From Saccostrea echinata (taxonomy: Eukaryota), in the NCBI RefSeq assembly GCF_033153115.1, contig NW_026889774.1:19344001-19408000 (forward strand): a stretch of 64,000 nt of DNA, written 5' to 3'. Below, in pieces: positions 28,811-37,600 of this stretch. The notes under the pieces are model-generated. The model saw only the letters and a list, made by a program, of their open reading frames with translations. It was not told where the DNA came from and searched no databases. The position numbers were made by a program, and so were the translations under genes. Positions within the stretch are counted from its first letter, which is position 1; every line of letters starts with the position of its first letter.

Positions 28811-30005
28811 TTCCGGATTTCAGTAGCCTAAAATCGGAACACTTCTAGTATACCGGTCCCTATAAATATGGCGCTAAAATAGGTGCCGCCGAAGGCGGTG
28901 TACAATATAATACGATCGCGTGAGCGATCGACAAAATCGATAAAAAAGGCCACAAATCGCAAAATTGAGCCAAAAATCGTGTTCCTTGTGAAAAATTGGG
29001 TTTAAAAAACTGGTTTTTAAACACAGTTTTTTAAATGAGAATTAAAAGGTTTTGTAAAATAACGTACTTGTTTAGTAGATAAAACTCCATTTTGCGTTGT
29101 TTAGGAATGTGGTCACATGATCAGCTTTTGACGTAATCTCATAAATATTCATGACGTGCGTCACTTGTGTTTTGACGTAATGAAGACTTATGAAGAAGTA
29201 GTTGATAGGACTCAAAGTGAAATGCTACTAAAATTGCAAGATTTTTGTGAGAAATGCAGGGATTTAACAAGTGATAACTAATTACTAGTAATTGGTTGAT
29301 TGAATTGTGCATCACCATTGATTTGAAAGAAAAAATATTCTGAATATGGACATTAGGAGGTTAGGATATCGAGCTAAGTAAACGGTAAGTCGCTTTTACC
29401 AATTACTTGCCAAAACTTAGCGCACCATATCGGGCACGTTTCAACATTAGACCAAGGCTAATTCATCCAAGTTTCGCAAAACTTTCCTGTTCTTCCGGTT
29501 CTTTGTAAGCAAAAATTGTATGAATAACTTCAATAAGCCCAAAGTGATATAGATGCGAGCATGGGTGAATGTAAAACAGTTACAATATCCGAGCTATTTA
29601 TATTCTAACCCTAATCCGTAGGTCGCATACAGTGCCATATTTAATTAACGGTTTGTTTAAGTTTTGCATGTTTCATGCTTTACTCCTATAAAATGGTATA
29701 TCGGCACGGTTCGACATTAGGCTGATTCATGCAAGTTTTTGGTCACAAAAGGCACTTGGCAGTGCCTTTTGTAAGCAAAAATTACATGAATTAGCCCGAA
29801 GTCAGGAAGATTTAAGAGTGGATTTATAAAACAGTTCCAATCTTAAAACAATATACCCTAACCCTAATCACTCGATCGAATGCGTTTTGTTGAAGCGAGG
29901 GGAAAATGGCGGTTTGTTTACATTCTGCATAGCAACGGCAAGGGAAATAACTGCTCATGCGCAATCGCGTGATTCTGGGGACCGGCATACTAGAAACTTC
30001 CCGGC
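28811..30005. mobile_element. Helentron/HINE-like non-autonomous element with two internal ~270-bp repeats
   Basis: Subterminal inverted repeats TTCTAGTATACCGGTCCC (28843-28860) and GGGACCGGCATACTAGAA (29978-29995), terminal hairpin 28811-28839, T-rich flanks. Diverged tandem units ~29427-29696 and ~29697-29935, each with TAACCCTAA. Confidence 0.65.
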
Positions 30006-30125
30006 TTTTTTAAAGTAATGTAGTCCTTTAACTTTTAACTAATTTCACACTGACGTTCTTGACTTACGGTCGTATCAATAAAAAAATGTATGCTTGGGAC
30101 TGTAAAAAGAGAAATATATTGTGTA

Positions 30126-30230
30126 TGACGTCATAAAAACACACATATACACCACAAGAACGTAACAATCAATGTGACGTAACAATTATCACTACAACAA
30201 AAGTGGATGCGGATGTCGGACATATTGGCG
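30126..30230 (+). promoter_or_regulatory. Putative CRE-containing promoter and non-coding first exon of the orphan gene
   Basis: Perfect TGACGTCA at 30126-30133, TGACGTAA at 30175, candidate donor GTAAAA at 30231, acceptor TAG at 30312-30314 just before the ATG exon. Confidence 0.45.
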
Positions 30231-30320
30231 GTAAAATTCACGACTGAATTGAAATTTTTTGTTTTTGTTGATAGGAGGTAAAATATGCTCATAAATATGC
30301 CTTTTTGTTTGTAGAAAATC

Positions 30321-33300
30321 ATGGATGTTGAGTTGGATTTCGGGAATGAGGCAGTTAAAGATGTGGTAAGTAGTTCGACATAAGTTACACATCTTGCACA
30401 TCAATTATGAAAGTATTTTTTGCGACGAAATAACTGCATGGTAACTACCTTTTACAACAAGTACAGATAAAATTGTTCGTTAACAAAAATCATGATTGTC
30501 ATCATTCCATTGAAGTAAGAAAACTCAAAGGTATTAATTAATGTTGGTTGCAATCACCACAGTACAAAATATATGTAAATCTTATTTGCATTGTTTACAC
30601 TGAAGAAATATGACAAACATTCATACAAATCTCAAATACTATGTGGTTTTTTGAATAAGTATGTAATGTTTAAGTGTTTTTAAATTAGCCTGAAATAAAG
30701 AAAATTCTCAAAATTACATCGGTGTTGTGTTTTCAGGATACCAAATTACACATTTTGAAATTCGGCTATAGCTGGGTGGAGGAAGTTGAGAAGGAAGAAA
30801 GACTTATGAAGGTACATGTATTCAGCGTATCTAGACTTATGAAGGTACATATATTCACATCGTCGGTAACCCACGGGTGATTCACATCGATTCGTGGACT
30901 CAAAACCGTGGTTTGCGACGATGATGTATTCAGCGTATCTAGACTTATGAAGGTACATGTATTCAGCATATCTAGAAATGTCTTGTCACTCTTGTGTACA
31001 CAGTAACACAGTACAGTTCTAACAAGACTTAGTTCACAATTTGATTTCCTTAAAATTTATGGCACTATAGTATTTTTCATTACACATTTAAGCATATAAG
31101 CTATTTTGTGAATGAAATAAATGAAGTAAAACGTCCTTTTGAATCTGTTTTCTAGGAAGTCAAAGAACCAGTTTTAGAACAAAAAGATAAACAGAAGAAT
31201 AAATGCCAAATAAAACCGTTCACAAAAGAGACAAAGGAAATTACCAGGTAAAACTAGAAGTCTGTCAGTCTGTAGGATTATAATAATACTAAATTCTATA
31301 TGTTATATTAATACTGTATATTTTATATAAATTTTGCGTAAAATTGGCATCATACAGTAAATTCAAAATTTACGATACGACATTTTCATAACAAGTATTG
31401 ACTCTTGCAGAGAGCCACTCCTGGATTTCGGCGATGGACCGGTGGTAGATTTGGTAAATAAACAATTTGCTTTGTTTTGTTATTGTTGCATTTTTTAATT
31501 CACATGGTTTTGTGAAAGATACTTAAAAAGTTTTCCCATTAATTACATGTATATGTAACCATGCTTTTTCATGATTATATTGAGTAATTATGTATGGATA
31601 AAATGGATATGATTTTCAAATACAACCCCATCGAGAAGTTTTATTAAATATTATTTCACCAAATTTAACTTTGGATGTTTTTATTTAAGGACGCAAAATT
31701 AGAAATACTAAAGTTTCCGTACAGTTGGGCGGAGAAAGTTGAAGAGGAAGAGAGAGGAACAAAGGTAAAAAAAAAAGCCTCTTTTTCTCATAGTTACATT
31801 CGTAGACAAATTCACGTCTGTGTATTAAAGGAAGTCTTATAATTAATTTGTAAATGGAGCACAAAACAAATAAAGTTATGTTTAGGTACATATCTATTGA
31901 GGAGAATGAATTAATGATGAGGTTTCCTAATGATTTATAGAATACGTATGAAGGAGTATAAATGATAATTAAATACTTGAGTAATATTAATGATATTGTT
32001 AAATTTTGTTTGAATTTTAAATATCATCGCGGATTTACGGTCACTTCATAGCAAAAAAGGTCCATTTGAAATGAAGTATTTCTTAATCTGTTTTTGTAGG
32101 AAGTCAATGAACCAGCCTTAAAACAAGAGAGCGAACCCAGCGTTAAGATTTTCAGAGAAGAGAGAAACGAAATTCCCAGGTAATACCATAACTCTGTCGC
32201 ACTGTAATAGTATTGATTTATAAAATTCGAATCTCACGATAATACTCGATTGTTTCTCCGCATATTTAGTTTGCTATATTTGTAAATTTAACGTACACTA
32301 AACAGCAAATGTATCTAGTAAAATCGCAGTTACAATGACAATTTGATAGTATGCTCATTTTTTTTTTTATAACAGAGAGCCACTCTCGGATTTCGGCGAT
32401 CGACCGGTTACTAATTTGGTAAGTAAACCTGATATATTTTGTTGTTGCTGTTTATTTAATTAATATGAATTAGTGTAAGATACTGAAAAAGCGTCATTTA
32501 TAGAATTTAGTATATAGAATGTAGTTATGGTGATATGGGTCAACCGTGCTTTTTCATGATTGGAAGTTTCTAACTTTATGATGTACTGAACTAAAGTGAT
32601 GCTAATTGTTTTGTAGAATTATTTTCAATTTAACGTTGGGTGTTATAATTTTTAGGAAGAAAAATTAGAAATACTCAAGTTTCCCTACAACTGGGCAGAG
32701 AAAGTGGAAGAAGAAGAGAGAGAAACAAAGGTATGGATTTATTTTTCATATTTAAATTAAACTGATGTCACTTGTTTTTAAAATCAACAATCAATAAATC
32801 AAATGTCAATACTTTTAAAAAAAAAATATTAGTGTTTCTACTTTGTCAATTAAAATTGTTCAATTTTCTTAATATCACTTACATGCTTTACGGATTTGAA
32901 ACTTAGCAGTTAGACCACTCTAATAGTCTAACAGGATAAAAGAATGATAAAAATACTTAAAAAAGAAATTTTTACTTCATATAAATAAAAAAATAATTAA
33001 AATACTGATTCTTTAAAACACCCAATCATTTATTTTTTTTAGCTCTTATGCAACGAAGAAGATGAAAATGAAAATGACAACTACTTTGTTCCAAGAAGAC
33101 TTTTTCTTTTTGGAGTCGAAGAGTTCAAGGTACTTTTATTGTAAAAGATACATTTGAAATAATTTAAAACCGCATCACTTGTGTGTTCAAAAGGGTGAAT
33201 TAATTTTTATACCTTCCTTAATCAGTCAACATCATACACGCTTAACATTTTTTGTCAACCATAATATCCAGATGTCTAAAAATCGCAATATCCTTCATAA

Positions 33301-33817
33301 TTTAATGATGGGGCCCGACTCCTTGTCCATGATGGTTACAAAGTCCCCATTTTCTGGCCAACAGGTGTAAAATCAGACTATAATCTTTTATTTCAAAATA
33401 TTTTGAATCTCTGCAAATGAAAACTCTTGGATTCTTAAAGTAACAATTTTCCTCACCAAACAGTTATTGGAAGAATTTTTAGTGCATGCATGCAATTTAA
33501 TTGTAAATATAATTGTCCATCTGGCTATAAGATTGTTTTTTTTTTTTATAGAGCGATTTGAAGCAGTCAATCAAAAACACCAAACAACCCGATGTTCCTG
33601 AGAAATCAACTGATATGGTCTGCTCTAAATATGATTCTGTAGCAAAAGTGGTAAGTTAATGAAATAATAGCATCCAAAACATACTATGACAAAATAATTG
33701 CGTACAAAATTGTAAGTGTGAGAAATTCATGCATTTCTCATATTTTCTTTTCAGGCAACTATCAGAAAGAGAAATAGTATCGGCAGAAAAATCAAGACAT
33801 TCCTTGGACTCAGATAA
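30321..33817 (+). CDS. Uncharacterised 289-aa charged repeat protein encoded by 12 short exons
   Basis: Exons 30321-30365, 30737-30811, 31156-31247, 31411-31453, 31690-31764, 32100-32179, 32376-32418, 32656-32730, 33043-33129, 33272-33364, 33552-33650, 33755-33817. All GT-AG, phases match, 870 nt with no internal stop. Begins MDVELDFGNEAVKDVDTKLHILKFGYSWVEEVEKEER, ends RKRNSIGRKIKTFLGLR*. AATAAA at 33851, 33905, 33971. Confidence 0.85.
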
Positions 33818-34620
33818 AAGGAAAAATAGCAATGCAGTGTATATTTCTGAAATAAACATGGACGAAAGTACTTCAAGACTTTTTTTGGTTAAACTTCATC
33901 ATCAAATAAAAAAAATACCCATCTATTTATTTCTGTGTTTCTGTTTTCTTTTATGTTTTCTTTCATTTACAATAAATAAGGCCATTATTAGACTAAACAT
34001 TTTATATTATGTATAATCATTTGAAAATTAATGAATATTTTTTCAAATTAGGTCAAGTTTTGGACATAAAAAGTACACCAATTTTTCTTTAATAATCCGA
34101 CATGTACAATAAAGAAGAAAACGGATTTATCTTAAGACTTTGCTTTTCAACATTCGTTCAACGTAAGAATTTGTATTCCCTGTTTTTTTGTCTGAAACTT
34201 GCCAGTATTTCATATTTTCTAAGTACCATGTGGAATGTGGAACAAGATTACAACACCGTGACATAGATCATGTTATTTTAGTTTATTTGTTAGGTATAAT
34301 ATTCACTATTCCTGGCTTGTCAATAACATACGGGTAACATGTAATTAGATGATCTGTTTGATACTTTGATCAATGTACATGTAGACATCCCAAGATGATG
34401 AGGTTACACGGTTATACAAGAATACACACACTGATATGAATACTTACTTGAAATATACCATTCACCATGTCAATGAAAATATCTACAATGTATAGTTTGT
34501 TGAGAAGTACAAGAGACTAAATACTCAACGGAATCTATTAACTGTTAATTTCACTCCCAACTTAATATTCAGAGATTTCGAACAACAACTTTGTACAATT
34601 CAAGAACCCTGTCCTACTTT

Positions 34621-37600
34621 TCATTCCTTAGTCTCGTCATTTTCAAACGCTGGATTACTGAACTGAACATTCGGTTTCTGAGGTTCAACTTTAGCTGTTC
34701 CATTTTCCACCACTTCCTGAACTTTAGCTGTTCCATTTTCCACCACTTCTTGAACTTTAGCTGTTCCATTTTCCACCACTCCTTTATCCGATGTCTGCCC
34801 ATTCTGTCCTGTTCCTTGATCTATATCCACTGTGTGTTGTTCTGGTCTCCCGTTTGGTATGATTTCTGTATTTGGTTTGACAAAGGTAGTTTGAAGTGGA
34901 GTGTATTTTTCCATAGGAGGTTGAGACTGATCGGAGAGACTACTTTTAATGTAACCATTTGTTCCATTTATCTTTTGGCTTCTAGCTTTGTTTTCTTCAC
35001 TGTACCTTCCCACCTGATTTTCTGGCAAAGCTGGTCCCCAATTCTTTTCAGGAGAGGTTATTTTGACCAGCAACTAAAAAAATGTTTAAGGACGCATTTG
35101 ATTACTGCAACTCCACAAATTGCATGTTTCAGACATGATTTTTTAAATTCATGAAAAGTCTTTTTTTGTGATCTTTTAAATTCGATAGTAATTTCGACTG
35201 CAAATATTCTAAAGGAATTATCGCGATACAAAATTATCATTCGCATGTCTCATCGCAAGGACAGTTTTAGTGCAAACTCTTTTTTTTTTTAAACTTACAT
35301 CATATACCAAACTCCCCATTGATTTCTTTTATTTCATAGAAATTGGTGAAAATTCGTATATAAAGAATGAGATTATTAAATTATACCCTTCCAAGTCCAT
35401 TTCTGAAGGCCTCGAAGAAGAATATGACTGGAATCCATATTAGTGGCGCCAGTACCATAAGCCAGCCCAGTGCCTGACCAAAGTCCGGATAAACGTAACT
35501 TCCGTCTGTGGCTGGTTTGGTCTGAACAGCTTTGAAAATTATCACAGCCTGTTCGAAAATTAAATTTTTGACTTAACTTTTCATTGATTTTTTTTTATAA
35601 CGAATATAAAAGACATATCAACAAGAAAAAAAGGCCAAATAGACAAAATGGAAAAAAGATATCAAAATCTTACAGGAATACAATACATGAATAGATTCAT
35701 CTAAGCATGTGTATCAAATTCGCAATGTCATCTACAGTAAAACATGAAAATGTTCAGAGTGAGCACGCTTAAAACGAATACCAGCTGGTTATAACAAAAT
35801 TAAGCAAAATTAATTTAAACAAACTTAATTTAATGGACGATTGGCTCTTCATCTGCTTACATTTAATGGATGTATATTTATCAATGCAGTTTCAATGCAA
35901 AATGTTCATCTCTGAGTATATACACATATTATGGAAAACTTACTAGTAGTGCCAAGGGTGAAATCAACAGCCACATGGTCGCAAAGTAGCCGAAAAATAT
36001 GTTGATAACAATGTTAGAACCCAGCATCATCTCAATATCTCTCTTGAAGCGGAAAAACCCTGAAAATTGTTAATTCTGAATCTTGAATTCTTTCTTACAT
36101 ACGATGTACGTATGTATGTCTGATAAAAAACATCCAATATCGATGCCAATTGAATGCTAAGTTTCAATTTAATTTCTCAAGGTTAAAAACTGCCGAATGG
36201 AGGAAAAAAATATGGAAATAGGATCCAGATTATACACACCGTAGATATAAATTATGGCGATGATTTCAAATAATCCGACAAACAAAAGCGGGAAACCTCC
36301 AACAAACGTGTCCATTAGGTTGAGAGTATATTCTCCACCCTGCAAAAAAGAGTACATTTTTTTCTGCCATTTTTTTTCAAAAGTGCAACGAAGGAAATTA
36401 ATTACTCCTCGACTGAAATCTTGAGAGAAAGTCACCATTTTTCTTAAATTTCAGTGGGCAAATATAAAATCCATAATTATGAAATATTGCCCCTGGTATG
36501 AAAATTATTTAAGCCTGTGAACAAGTGAATTGGGTTGGTGATCATTTTCTATATATTTTTACTGGGTATTACTTTCCTTCATCCTTCACAACGCAGGGGT
36601 TTTAACCACGAGTGGACTCAGGACCCCTGACGTTGTCCCGCTACTGAACTGTTCAGTAAAATCTTGATTACTTTTATTTTTAACACAGAATCACTGTTTA
36701 TTCAAATTAAATATATACCAAATAACAATCATTTCATTCTGGTACATTCCTATAGACTGGAACTAATAGAACATGACTACATGTAGCTTACTCTGCAAGT
36801 CATGGGTAAACCAAGGAGAAATGCGGTACCACAAATTCCGGCGCGGAATAAAATCAGCCTTTTTTTGTTTGTGAAGAAATGGGGAAACTCATCCACTATT
36901 CCGGTAATTACCGTCTCCGTGATCGAAAACTAAAATGATAAAAAGAGAACTTTTTTATTTCACAATTAATTAGGTTGATCTCATTTAATCCGTGCATTGC
37001 GTTTTAAGGAAAAATGTCCATTCTTGTCAAAAAGCAATATACATGTTAATTTGCTTGCTATCAGATAGTAATGGGTAAATGAACTAAGAAAAAAAGTTTA
37101 AGCACCTGTGAACTGAACCCAAGTGTAGCCATCATGAAGAAAAATAGAATAGCCCACAATGGAGCCACCTGCATCTGCGCAAGGGCTTCTGGATAAACCA
37201 CAAACGTAAGTCCAGGTCCTACAAATAAAATAAAAGCAATAATTTCCTTAAATTTTGCAAATTGTGTTACTCGGACATTTAAAGTTATTCATAGTCTGCG
37301 CACGTGAACGATTAAAAGTTTTCTTCTCATGCATCCATGACGCATCAAAAAGCATAACTTACTGCTCTCATACTAGAAAATATTTTTTTCCAAGAATATT
37401 ACATCTGTATTTGGTACCTCCTTTAACTACATTGTCCATTGTGACTCCTTTATAATCAGCCATGAATCCAAGTACTGAGAAGATCACAAATCCGGCATAG
37501 AAGCTAGTCAGGCAATTAATAAAGGGGACAACCAGCGAATCCCTAAAAATAATTATTACAGTAAAAGAATAATGATACTACTACAGTGACTAATACAATT

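What the first reader, a model, noticed from the sequence alone, without database searches (positions are those of the whole stretch)
30321..33817. Hidden 12-short-exon orphan gene with three SLIP1/MIF4G-binding-like motifs
Seen: twelve 43-99 nt exons with canonical splice sites join into an uninterrupted 289-aa frame that the ORF track does not recover. The module (L/S)DFG-x5-6-(V/L)-(D/E)xKLxILKFxY-(S/N)WxExVExEER occurs three times (SWVEEVEKEE, SWAEKVEEEE, NWAEKVEEEE), followed by an unrelated region and a basic amphipathic end (RKRNSIGRKIKTFLGLR). Known: the SLIP1/MIF4GD-binding motif of SLBP, eIF3g (SWADQVEE) and DDX19/DBP5 (SWALAVDE) has the same W-x3-V-(D/E)-E pattern. Inference: this may be a lineage-specific multivalent adaptor or decoy for MIF4G-domain translation factors, possibly membrane- or RNA-tethered through its C-terminus.
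Basis: partly seen in the sequence, partly recalled or inferred. Interest (0 to 1): 0.85.

Follow-up and report, generated by a model that had tools for sequence, protein, structure and literature searches.

The report
Oyster gene with three SLIP1-binding-like helices
This is a real, spliced and expressed rock-oyster gene, already listed in NCBI as an uncharacterised protein, from a large family seen only in the genus Saccostrea, whose repeated helix matches the short motif that SLBP, eIF3g and DBP5 use to bind the translation adaptor SLIP1; that binding is untested.

Summary
The exon chain is real. Exon 10 (33272-33364) is skipped: exon 9 joins exon 11 in frame.

The gene is not hidden. It is Saccostrea echinata LOC133192929, "uncharacterized protein", 266 aa. 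That model lacks exon 10 and adds a 6-codon first exon (30213-30230).

It is not an orphan within its genome:
- The 25-aa Trp exon has at least 107 matches in about 74 clusters on 18 contigs.
- Synonymous sites are saturated, and pN/pS is 0.03 at the conserved codons.
- Outside the genome, 1.84 billion representative proteins gave 31 matches. Every one that carries an organism name is Saccostrea, apart from one weak fungal hit. No Pfam domain matches.

The SLIP1 resemblance held up better than expected:
- The near-invariant positions ([S/N]-W-A-[D/E]-x-V-E-x-x-E) are the published SLIP1 contact positions.
- A blind search of all PDB sequences returned only the SLBP peptide from the SLIP1 complex and eIF3g, both below significance.
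- The oyster's own eIF3g carries SWAEQVEQVE, and a SLIP1-like MIF4G gene is present.

Binding is untested. The equally conserved upstream KLxILKFxY has no counterpart in known motifs. My reading is a multivalent SLIP1/CTIF ligand, confidence about 0.4.

The parts
30213..30230 (+). Annotated first coding mini-exon (M-S-D-I-L-A), followed by a GT donor at 30231
   Evidence: Read. It matches the N-terminus of NCBI product P0002. A similar N-terminus is seen in the S. cucullata relative P0032. It was not seen in the RNA contigs, which begin at 30315.
30315..30365 (+).
   Evidence: Contigs of X3 and X4 start exactly at 30315. The joint 30365|30737 is seen in X1, X3 and X4. Translation.
30737..30811 (+). 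Trp-motif exon 1 (75 nt, phase 0-0): KLHILKFGYSWVEEVEKEE
   Evidence: Residue +1 is Val, so the match to the SBM is looser here.
30858..30923 (.). 66-bp element in intron 2 with 14-nt inverted ends, flanked by a 42-nt duplication that copies the exon-2 donor context
   Evidence: The copied donor sites are not used in the contigs.
31156..31247 (+). Linker exon 1 (92 nt, Lys/Glu-rich)
31411..31453 (+). LDFG exon 2 (43 nt)
31690..31764 (+). Trp-motif exon 2: KLEILKFPYSWAEKVEEEE, a strict SBM-like match
32100..32179 (+). Linker exon 2 (80 nt)
32376..32418 (+). LDFG exon 3 (43 nt)
32656..32730 (+). Trp-motif exon 3: KLEILKFPYNWAEKVEEEE, a strict SBM-like match
33043..33129 (+). Exon with the second family motif (acidic run, then YFVPRRLFLFGVEEFK)
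   Evidence: 31 matches in the same genome, lying downstream of Trp exons. The motif is present in P0001, P0006, P0009, P0018 and P0025. X4 carries an in-frame 6-nt deletion at 33062.
33272..33364 (+).
   Evidence: The joint 33129|33552 skips it in all four runs. Only an unspliced contig at depth 2.3 covers it. It is absent from P0002.
33552..33650 (+). Gene-specific exon (99 nt)
   Evidence: It is the only match in the genome, which also rules out an intronless retrocopy as the source of the joined contigs. Joints.
33755..33817 (+). Last coding exon, ending in RKRNSIGRKIKTFLGLR and a stop codon. The 3' UTR continues to about 33886-33990, with AATAAA at 33851, 33905 and 33971.
   Evidence: C-terminal ends of the same type are seen in P0001, P0011 and P0025.

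Best explanation
Shown:
- This is an expressed gene of Saccostrea echinata with 11 coding exons (12 counting the annotated mini-exon).
- It encodes a 258/266-aa, mostly disordered, Lys/Glu-rich protein.
- An old tandem triplication of a roughly 960-bp, three-exon unit gave the protein three modules.
- Each module is an LDFG segment, a short helix (KLxILKF) and a longer acidic helix that starts at an invariant Trp.
- After the modules come a PRRLFLFG motif and a basic C-terminal end.
- The gene is one of about 70 loci of a family seen only in Saccostrea.

Inferred:
- The Trp helix ([S/N]-W-A-[D/E]-x-V-E-x-x-E) works like the SLIP1-binding motif of SLBP, eIF3g and DBP5. It would dock as a helix on the convex face of a SLIP1/CTIF-type MIF4G domain.
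- With three copies, the protein would act as a multivalent ligand. It would either compete with eIF3g, SLBP and DBP5 for SLIP1, or bring several SLIP1 dimers together.
- The PRRLFLFG motif and the basic C-terminal end would add a second, still unknown, attachment.
For: The gene is real:
- Ten GT..AG joints are seen in contigs of four runs from two studies.
- The NCBI product P0002 is identical to the exon chain without exon 10.
- Exon 11 is unique in the genome, so there is no retrocopy.

The motif is under selection:
- 35 paralogous Trp exons have saturated synonymous sites.
- pN/pS is 0.21 overall and 0.03 at the 11 conserved codons.
- Introns of the repeat units are at the shuffled baseline while the exons are 86-87% identical.

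The motif matches the SLIP1-binding motif:
- W, V(+4), E(+5) and E(+8) are invariant or conserved in at least 90% of copies. A(+1), D/E(+2) and S/N(-1) predominate.
- PMC3763545 names the SLIP1 contacts as Trp94/Val98/Glu99/Glu102 with Gly95, Asp96 and Asn93 in SLBP, and Trp6/Val10/Asp11/Glu14 with Ala7 and Ser5 in DBP5.
- The family profile searched against all PDB sequences gave only 4jhk_C (the SLBP peptide bound to SLIP1) and eIF3g at SWADQVEEE.

Structure and placement fit:
- AlphaFold2 predicts helices at pLDDT 70-82 for the modules and disorder elsewhere.
- In most family members the module sits at the very N-terminus. PMC3763545 places the motifs of DBP5 and eIF3g in unstructured N-terminal regions.

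The presumed partner system is present:
- The oyster eIF3g mini-exon reads KPISWAEQVEQVED.
- The only PDB matches of a SLIP1-like MIF4G exon are SLIP1 entries, at E = 3e-7.
Against: - No binding data exist, and no model of the complex could be made with these tools.
- The PDB matches have E-values of 0.33 and 5.2, so only their identity is telling, not their score.
- The most conserved part of the module also includes KLxILKFxY and LDFG, which no known SLIP1-binding motif has. The hydrophobic residues (L, I, L, F, Y, W, A, V) could instead form the core of a small helical hairpin, rather than a surface offered to a partner.
- Module 1 of this gene has Val at +1, where the SLIP1 pocket takes Gly or Ala.
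- In the oyster SLIP1-like exon pair, my hand alignment keeps Arg76, Gln84, Phe87, Leu125 and Pro128. It does not keep Arg77, Asn81 or Ala124, and the first exon scores better against PAIP1.
- The SLIP1-like gene is not expanded along with the family: there are two identical copies and two broken ones.
Confidence: 0.4

Rival explanations
1. The module (LDFG, KLxILKFxY, then the Trp helix) is a small folding or self-associating unit of its own, or a ligand for an unrelated partner. The likeness to the SLIP1-binding motif would then be convergence on a generic acidic amphipathic helix. The family would be a genus-specific set of disordered scaffold proteins whose function is set by the PRRLFLFG motif and the basic or Cys-rich C-terminus, for example membrane or cytoskeleton attachment.
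For: - The invariant residues extend 10 positions upstream of the Trp and are mostly hydrophobic.
- AlphaFold2 predicts helix-turn-helix for each module at moderate confidence.
- The second and third family motifs are conserved independently. One subfamily replaces LFLFG with a Cys cluster before a basic end (P0007, P0022).
- The SLIP1-like gene has not expanded along with the family.
Against: - Seven positions of the Trp helix agree with the SLIP1 contact positions.
- The only two PDB sequences that the profile finds both carry the motif.
- A simple hydrophobic-core reading does not explain the near-invariant Glu at +5 and +8.
Confidence: 0.45
2. The module was copied from the oyster's own eIF3g N-terminal mini-exon (or from SLBP) and then amplified. 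It would then be a true homologue of that motif, not a convergent look-alike.
For: The oyster eIF3g mini-exon KPISWAEQVEQVED and the family's FPYSWAEKVEEEE agree at 8 of 10 positions around the Trp.
Against: - The stretch is too short for any test of homology.
- The exon borders differ: the eIF3g exon starts 4 codons before the Trp, the family exon 12 codons before it.
- No eIF3g Pfam match is found in any family member.
Confidence: 0.1
3. The repeated exons are neutral, decaying copies, either repeat-borne or pseudogenes, and transcription is noise.
For: - Some genomic copies contain stop codons.
- The family is large and dispersed.
Against: - pN/pS is 0.03 at the conserved codons while synonymous sites are saturated.
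- Contig depth is 76-196 and splicing is precise in four runs.
- The frame is kept across units: 210 and 198 nt per unit.
- An in-frame indel allele is seen.
Confidence: 0.03

Closest known systems
[quoted passage not shown] 2013, PMC3763545; PDB 4JHK, 4JHJ)
   Same: - The positions agree: S/N at -1, Trp, a small residue at +1, an acidic residue at +2, Val at +4, an acidic residue at +5 and Glu at +8.
- The segment is predicted helical within a disordered region.
- It usually sits at the N-terminus.
- These proteins are the only PDB hits of the family profile.
   Different: - The motif occurs 1-4 times per protein, against once in the known cases.
- It is preceded by an equally conserved KLxILKFxY and an LDFG segment that known SBMs lack.
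- The host proteins have no RNA-binding, helicase or eIF3 domain.
- The family has about 70 loci and is confined to one oyster genus.
- Binding is untested.
eIF3g N-terminus of the same oyster (G000 C30, about 10.885 Mb)
   Same: SWAEQVE there against SWAEKVE here. Both are carried on very short exons.
   Different: No similarity beyond about 10 residues. No PF12353 domain or RRM is found in the family.
Uncharacterised NCBI models of Saccostrea echinata and S. cucullata (LOC133192929, LOC134277992, LOC134260298 and others, some auto-named 'tropomyosin-like', 'golgin-like' or 'myb-like protein X')
   Same: These are true family members: same modules, same PRRLFLFG motif and same C-terminal end.
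   Different: They have no described function. The automatic names reflect Lys/Glu-rich composition only.

Membership tests
SBM-bearing SLIP1 ligands (SLBP / eIF3g / DBP5 type) | Essential Trp at the start of the helix | tested here: met
   Trp is invariant in 41 of 41 aligned copies, including all three modules of this gene. The requirement comes from PMC3763545.
SBM-bearing SLIP1 ligands (SLBP / eIF3g / DBP5 type) | Small residue (Gly/Ala) at +1, fitting the shallow pocket | tested here: inconclusive
   Ala in modules 2 and 3 and in 30 of 35 paralogous exons. Val in module 1 and in 4 of 35.
SBM-bearing SLIP1 ligands (SLBP / eIF3g / DBP5 type) | Val at +4, acidic residue at +5, Glu at +8, and an acidic residue at +2 | tested here: met
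   Among 35 paralogous exons: Val 33, Glu(+5) 34, Glu(+8) 33 (the other 2 are Asp), D/E(+2) 30.
SBM-bearing SLIP1 ligands (SLBP / eIF3g / DBP5 type) | Lies in an unstructured region and can form a helix | tested here: met
   In the AlphaFold2 model, helices start at the Trp with pLDDT 70-82, and the linkers and tail are below 50. This is a prediction only.
SBM-bearing SLIP1 ligands (SLBP / eIF3g / DBP5 type) | Direct, Trp-dependent binding to SLIP1 (or the CTIF MIF4G domain) | not testable with these tools
   No complex modelling or experiment was available. A SLIP1-like MIF4G exon exists in the genome, with pocket residues only partly conserved under my hand alignment.
eIF3g (Pfam PF12353 plus RRM) | eIF3g domain present | tested here: not met
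   None of 10 family proteins reaches any Pfam curated cut-off. The real eIF3g gene lies elsewhere, on C30.
Any curated Pfam family | Score above the gathering threshold | tested here: not met
   The best hit is 16.2 bits, against cut-offs of 21 bits or more.

The most novel reading that the evidence does not exclude
One oyster genus has amplified, to about 70 loci, a family of disordered proteins that carry one to four copies of a working SLIP1/CTIF-binding helix. These would be multivalent decoys or clustering agents that retune SLIP1-dependent steps of mRNA export and translation, histone mRNAs among them. It would be the first case of a translation-factor docking motif expanded into a gene family.
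Probability: 0.3. Interest if true: 0.8.

Novelty: new variant of a known kind. Interest (0 to 1): 0.55.

Why it matters
Only three proteins are known to carry the SLIP1-binding motif, each with one copy. A large, genus-restricted, strongly constrained family with several copies per protein would be a natural experiment in how a short docking motif is recruited and multiplied. It would give a direct handle (peptide against MIF4G domain, Trp-to-Ala control) on SLIP1/CTIF biology outside vertebrates.

If the motif does not bind SLIP1, the family is still an unreported case: an abundant set of proteins under strong purifying selection, with three conserved linear motifs and no known domain.

Tried and rejected
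- **Joined spliced product:** Exons were searched one by one, by reference. The full-length product came back from the database as P0002 and was used from then on.
- **Exon 10:** rejected.
- **Pfam:** nothing above any cut-off.
- **ESM Atlas on one module:** no usable feature hit. The structure rows were unrelated bacterial and viral helices.
- **Fold search:** not run, because the model's mean pLDDT of 57.9 would give meaningless matches.
- **Full-length family profile against 5.8 billion proteins:** only Saccostrea. The single non-oyster hit of the motif profile is a fungal repeat protein at E = 5e-4, and I take it as unrelated.
- **Exon 12 against the same genome:** only itself. The query is too short for the first-look filter, so conservation of the C-terminal end rests on the protein models.
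- **Co-expansion of SLIP1-like genes:** not found.
- **Other motif classes, compared from memory and by eye only:** kinesin-light-chain W-acidic, gamma-ear DFGxΦ, PAM2, eIF4E-binding YxxxxLΦ, LIR and RVxF. None fits the conserved positions.
- **5' end:** contigs stop exactly at 30315, so the annotated mini-exon 30213-30230 could be neither confirmed nor refuted.
- **Run metadata:** tissue and organism of the runs are coded, so nothing can be said about where the gene is expressed.
Full report
**What is in the sequence.**
The window is G000:C25:19344001-19408000 of a 923-Mb genome. Named database matches identify it as the rock oyster Saccostrea echinata. Each has an AG acceptor and a GT donor. 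Lengths are 45, 75, 92, 43, 75, 80, 43, 75, 87, 93, 99 and 63 nt, and together they read as 289 codons plus a stop.

Exons 1-8 are an old tandem triplication of a roughly 960-bp, three-exon unit. The 43-nt and 75-nt exons of units 2 and 3 are 86-87% identical. Their introns are no more alike than shuffled sequence.

**Is it transcribed and spliced as predicted?**
I laid the contigs of four public runs (two studies) on 29000-34900. Contigs of 836-852 nt at depth 76-196 carry ten GT..AG joints at exactly the predicted borders, with one exception. Exon 9 is joined directly to exon 11 (33129|33552) in all four runs. Predicted exon 10 (33272-33364) is covered only by an unspliced 156-nt contig at depth 2.3.

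Both neighbours of exon 10 are in phase 0, so the frame holds and the product is 31 residues shorter. Exon 11 occurs only once in the genome, so the joined contigs cannot come from an intronless DNA copy.

That is where the annotated intron 1 would end.

Exons were searched one by one, by reference.

**It is annotated, and it is not an orphan in its own genome.**
A profile of 41 copies of the 25-aa Trp exon (A1) was run against 1.84 billion representative proteins and found 31 matches. One of them, P0002 (266 aa), is the product of this gene: NCBI "uncharacterized protein LOC133192929 [Saccostrea echinata]". It lacks exon 10 and begins with a six-codon mini-exon that I located at 30213-30230 (donor GT at 30231, acceptor AG at 30313-30314).

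A relative in S. cucullata (P0032) has a similar N-terminus.

Within the genome, the Trp exon has at least 107 matches (a lower bound). They fall into about 74 clusters on 18 contigs, with one to three copies per cluster, mostly spaced 650-1050 bp apart. The exon with YFVPRRLFLFG has 31 matches downstream of such clusters.

Outside this genome, every match that carries an organism name is from S. echinata or S. cucullata. The rest are short unnamed metagenome fragments and one weak fungal repeat protein. No member reaches any Pfam cut-off.

**Selection.**
Among 35 distinct paralogous Trp exons the synonymous sites are saturated (pS about 1). pN is 0.20 overall and 0.036 at the eleven conserved codons, giving a pN/pS of 0.03 there. 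Leu, Ile, Val and Ala at invariant positions use all their codons. The peptide, not the DNA, is what is conserved. An allele in run X4 has an in-frame 6-nt deletion in the acidic run of exon 9.

**What the protein looks like.**
AlphaFold2 with the family alignment gives mean pLDDT 57.9. Each module is a short helix over KLxILKF, a turn, and a longer helix starting at the Trp, at pLDDT 70-82. The linkers and the C-terminal third are below 50.

The family shares three linear elements:
- one to four N-terminal modules, (I/L)LDFGxxPVxxx-DxKLxILKFxY(S/N)WA(D/E)xVExxE;
- a (Y/F)xP(R/K)(R/K)LF(L/F)FG motif near the C-terminus;
- an end of the type K-R-x-S-I-x-x-R-I-K-x-F-L-G-L-R. One subfamily has instead a Cys cluster followed by I-G-x-L-x-R-I-R-K-x-F-R-R-N.

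**The SLIP1 question.**
The paper that defined the motif (PMC3763545) gives the SLIP1 contacts:
- In zebrafish SLBP: Trp94, Val98, Glu99 and Glu102, with Gly95 in a shallow pocket, Asp96, and Asn93 making polar contacts.
- In DBP5: Trp6, Val10, Asp11 and Glu14, with Ala7 and Ser5.

These are positions -1, 0, +1, +2, +4, +5 and +8. In the oyster family those are the constrained positions of the second helix. The counts below are from 35 paralogous exons.

| Position | Residue | Copies |
|---|---|---|
| 0 | Trp | 35/35 |
| +4 | Val | 33/35 |
| +5 | Glu | 34/35 |
| +8 | Glu | 33/35 (the other 2 are Asp) |
| +1 | Ala | 30/35 |
| +2 | Asp/Glu | 30/35 |
| -1 | Ser or Asn | 34/35 |

As a blind test I searched the family profile against all 177,635 distinct PDB sequences at E up to 10. 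Only two came back: chain C of 4JHK, the SLBP peptide bound to SLIP1 (NWGDEVEEQE, E = 0.33), and eIF3g at SWADQVEEE (E = 5.2). The scores are not significant. The telling point is that both are motif carriers.

By my own rough estimate from typical residue frequencies, the strict pattern should occur less than once per proteome by chance.

The system the motif would plug into exists in this oyster:
- eIF3g has a mini-exon reading KPISWAEQVEQVED.
- A well-formed exon 4.6 kb upstream of the SLBP RNA-binding exons reads RDWAEEMEIRDRE. This is a candidate only, since one such match in 8 kb is not unexpected.
- An exon at C17:5165056-5165361 has SLIP1 (4JHJ, 4JHK, 2I2O) as its only PDB matches, at E = 3e-7.

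**What speaks against it.**
- Nothing here shows binding.
- The upstream half of the module is as conserved as the Trp helix and has no counterpart in known motifs. Its residues are mostly hydrophobic, so Trp, Ala and Val could be the core of a small hairpin rather than an exposed docking face.
- Module 1 of this gene has Val at +1.
- In the SLIP1-like gene, my hand alignment of the upstream exon keeps Arg76, Gln84 and Phe87 but not Arg77 or Asn81. That exon scores better against PAIP1 (E = 0.009) than against SLIP1 (E = 0.83).
- The SLIP1-like exon exists as two identical copies (C17 and C63, possibly one locus assembled twice) plus two broken ones. There is no co-expansion.

**Verdict.**
It is wrong on exon 10, and the words "hidden" and "orphan" overstate the case.
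- I put about 0.4 on the Trp helices being SLIP1/CTIF-type ligands, and about 0.45 on an unrelated partner or a self-contained fold.
- The family itself has, as far as these searches show, not been described: about 70 loci, one genus, strong constraint, no known domain.

Noticed in passing
window 30816-30998 (intron 2): A 66-bp element with 14-nt inverted ends (30858-30871 and 30910-30923) sits between two 98%-identical 42-nt copies of a segment that repeats the exon-2 donor context (CTTATGAAG|GTACAT). This creates two extra donor-like sites, which the contigs do not use.
   Followed up: partly
window 32397 -> 31689 (read-laying table 5c): Contigs in all four runs (depth 151 in X1) join the start of an exon-7-like LDFG exon, through 20 other letters, to an exon-5-like Trp exon. 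Other loose ends at 31409, 32373, 32680 and 32719 look similar. These are most likely expressed close paralogues (for example C25 at 13.41 or 21.92 Mb) or alleles.
   Followed up: no
window 33062 and 33581-33621: Run X4 carries an in-frame 6-nt deletion in the acidic run of exon 9. It also has a contig with about ten substitutions within 40 nt of exon 11. This is a divergent allele or individual.
   Followed up: no
window 29203-30002 and 34281-34900: Transcript contigs lie on both sides of the gene. Upstream there is a non-canonical 453-nt skip (29467 to 29921, ends CA..TA). Downstream there are contigs at depth about 105-130 in X1. These are probably neighbouring genes or UTRs and were not examined.
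   Followed up: no
G000 C17:5165113-5165331; C63:100628-100846; C63:209287-209502; C63:138000-138140: A SLIP1-like MIF4G exon is present as two 100%-identical copies, on C17 and on the small contig C63, plus two copies with stop codons on C63. Earlier notes of this scan mention a co-duplicated MIF4G gene with an unusual N-terminal exon elsewhere in this genome. I did not check whether these are the same loci.
   Followed up: partly
P0031 (Drechslerella stenobrocha EWC43694.1, 1309 aa): A fungal hypothetical protein has five matches to W[AGS][DE]xV[ED]xxE, at residues 861, 929, 997, 1064 and 1123 (59-68 aa apart). It is an unrelated repeat that happens to share the pattern.
   Followed up: no
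window 30120-30185: Two CRE-like sites (TGACGTCA, TGACGTAA) lie 30-90 bp upstream of the annotated first exon. A/T-rich TATA-like runs lie at 30277-30297, just before 30315, where the contigs begin.
   Followed up: no
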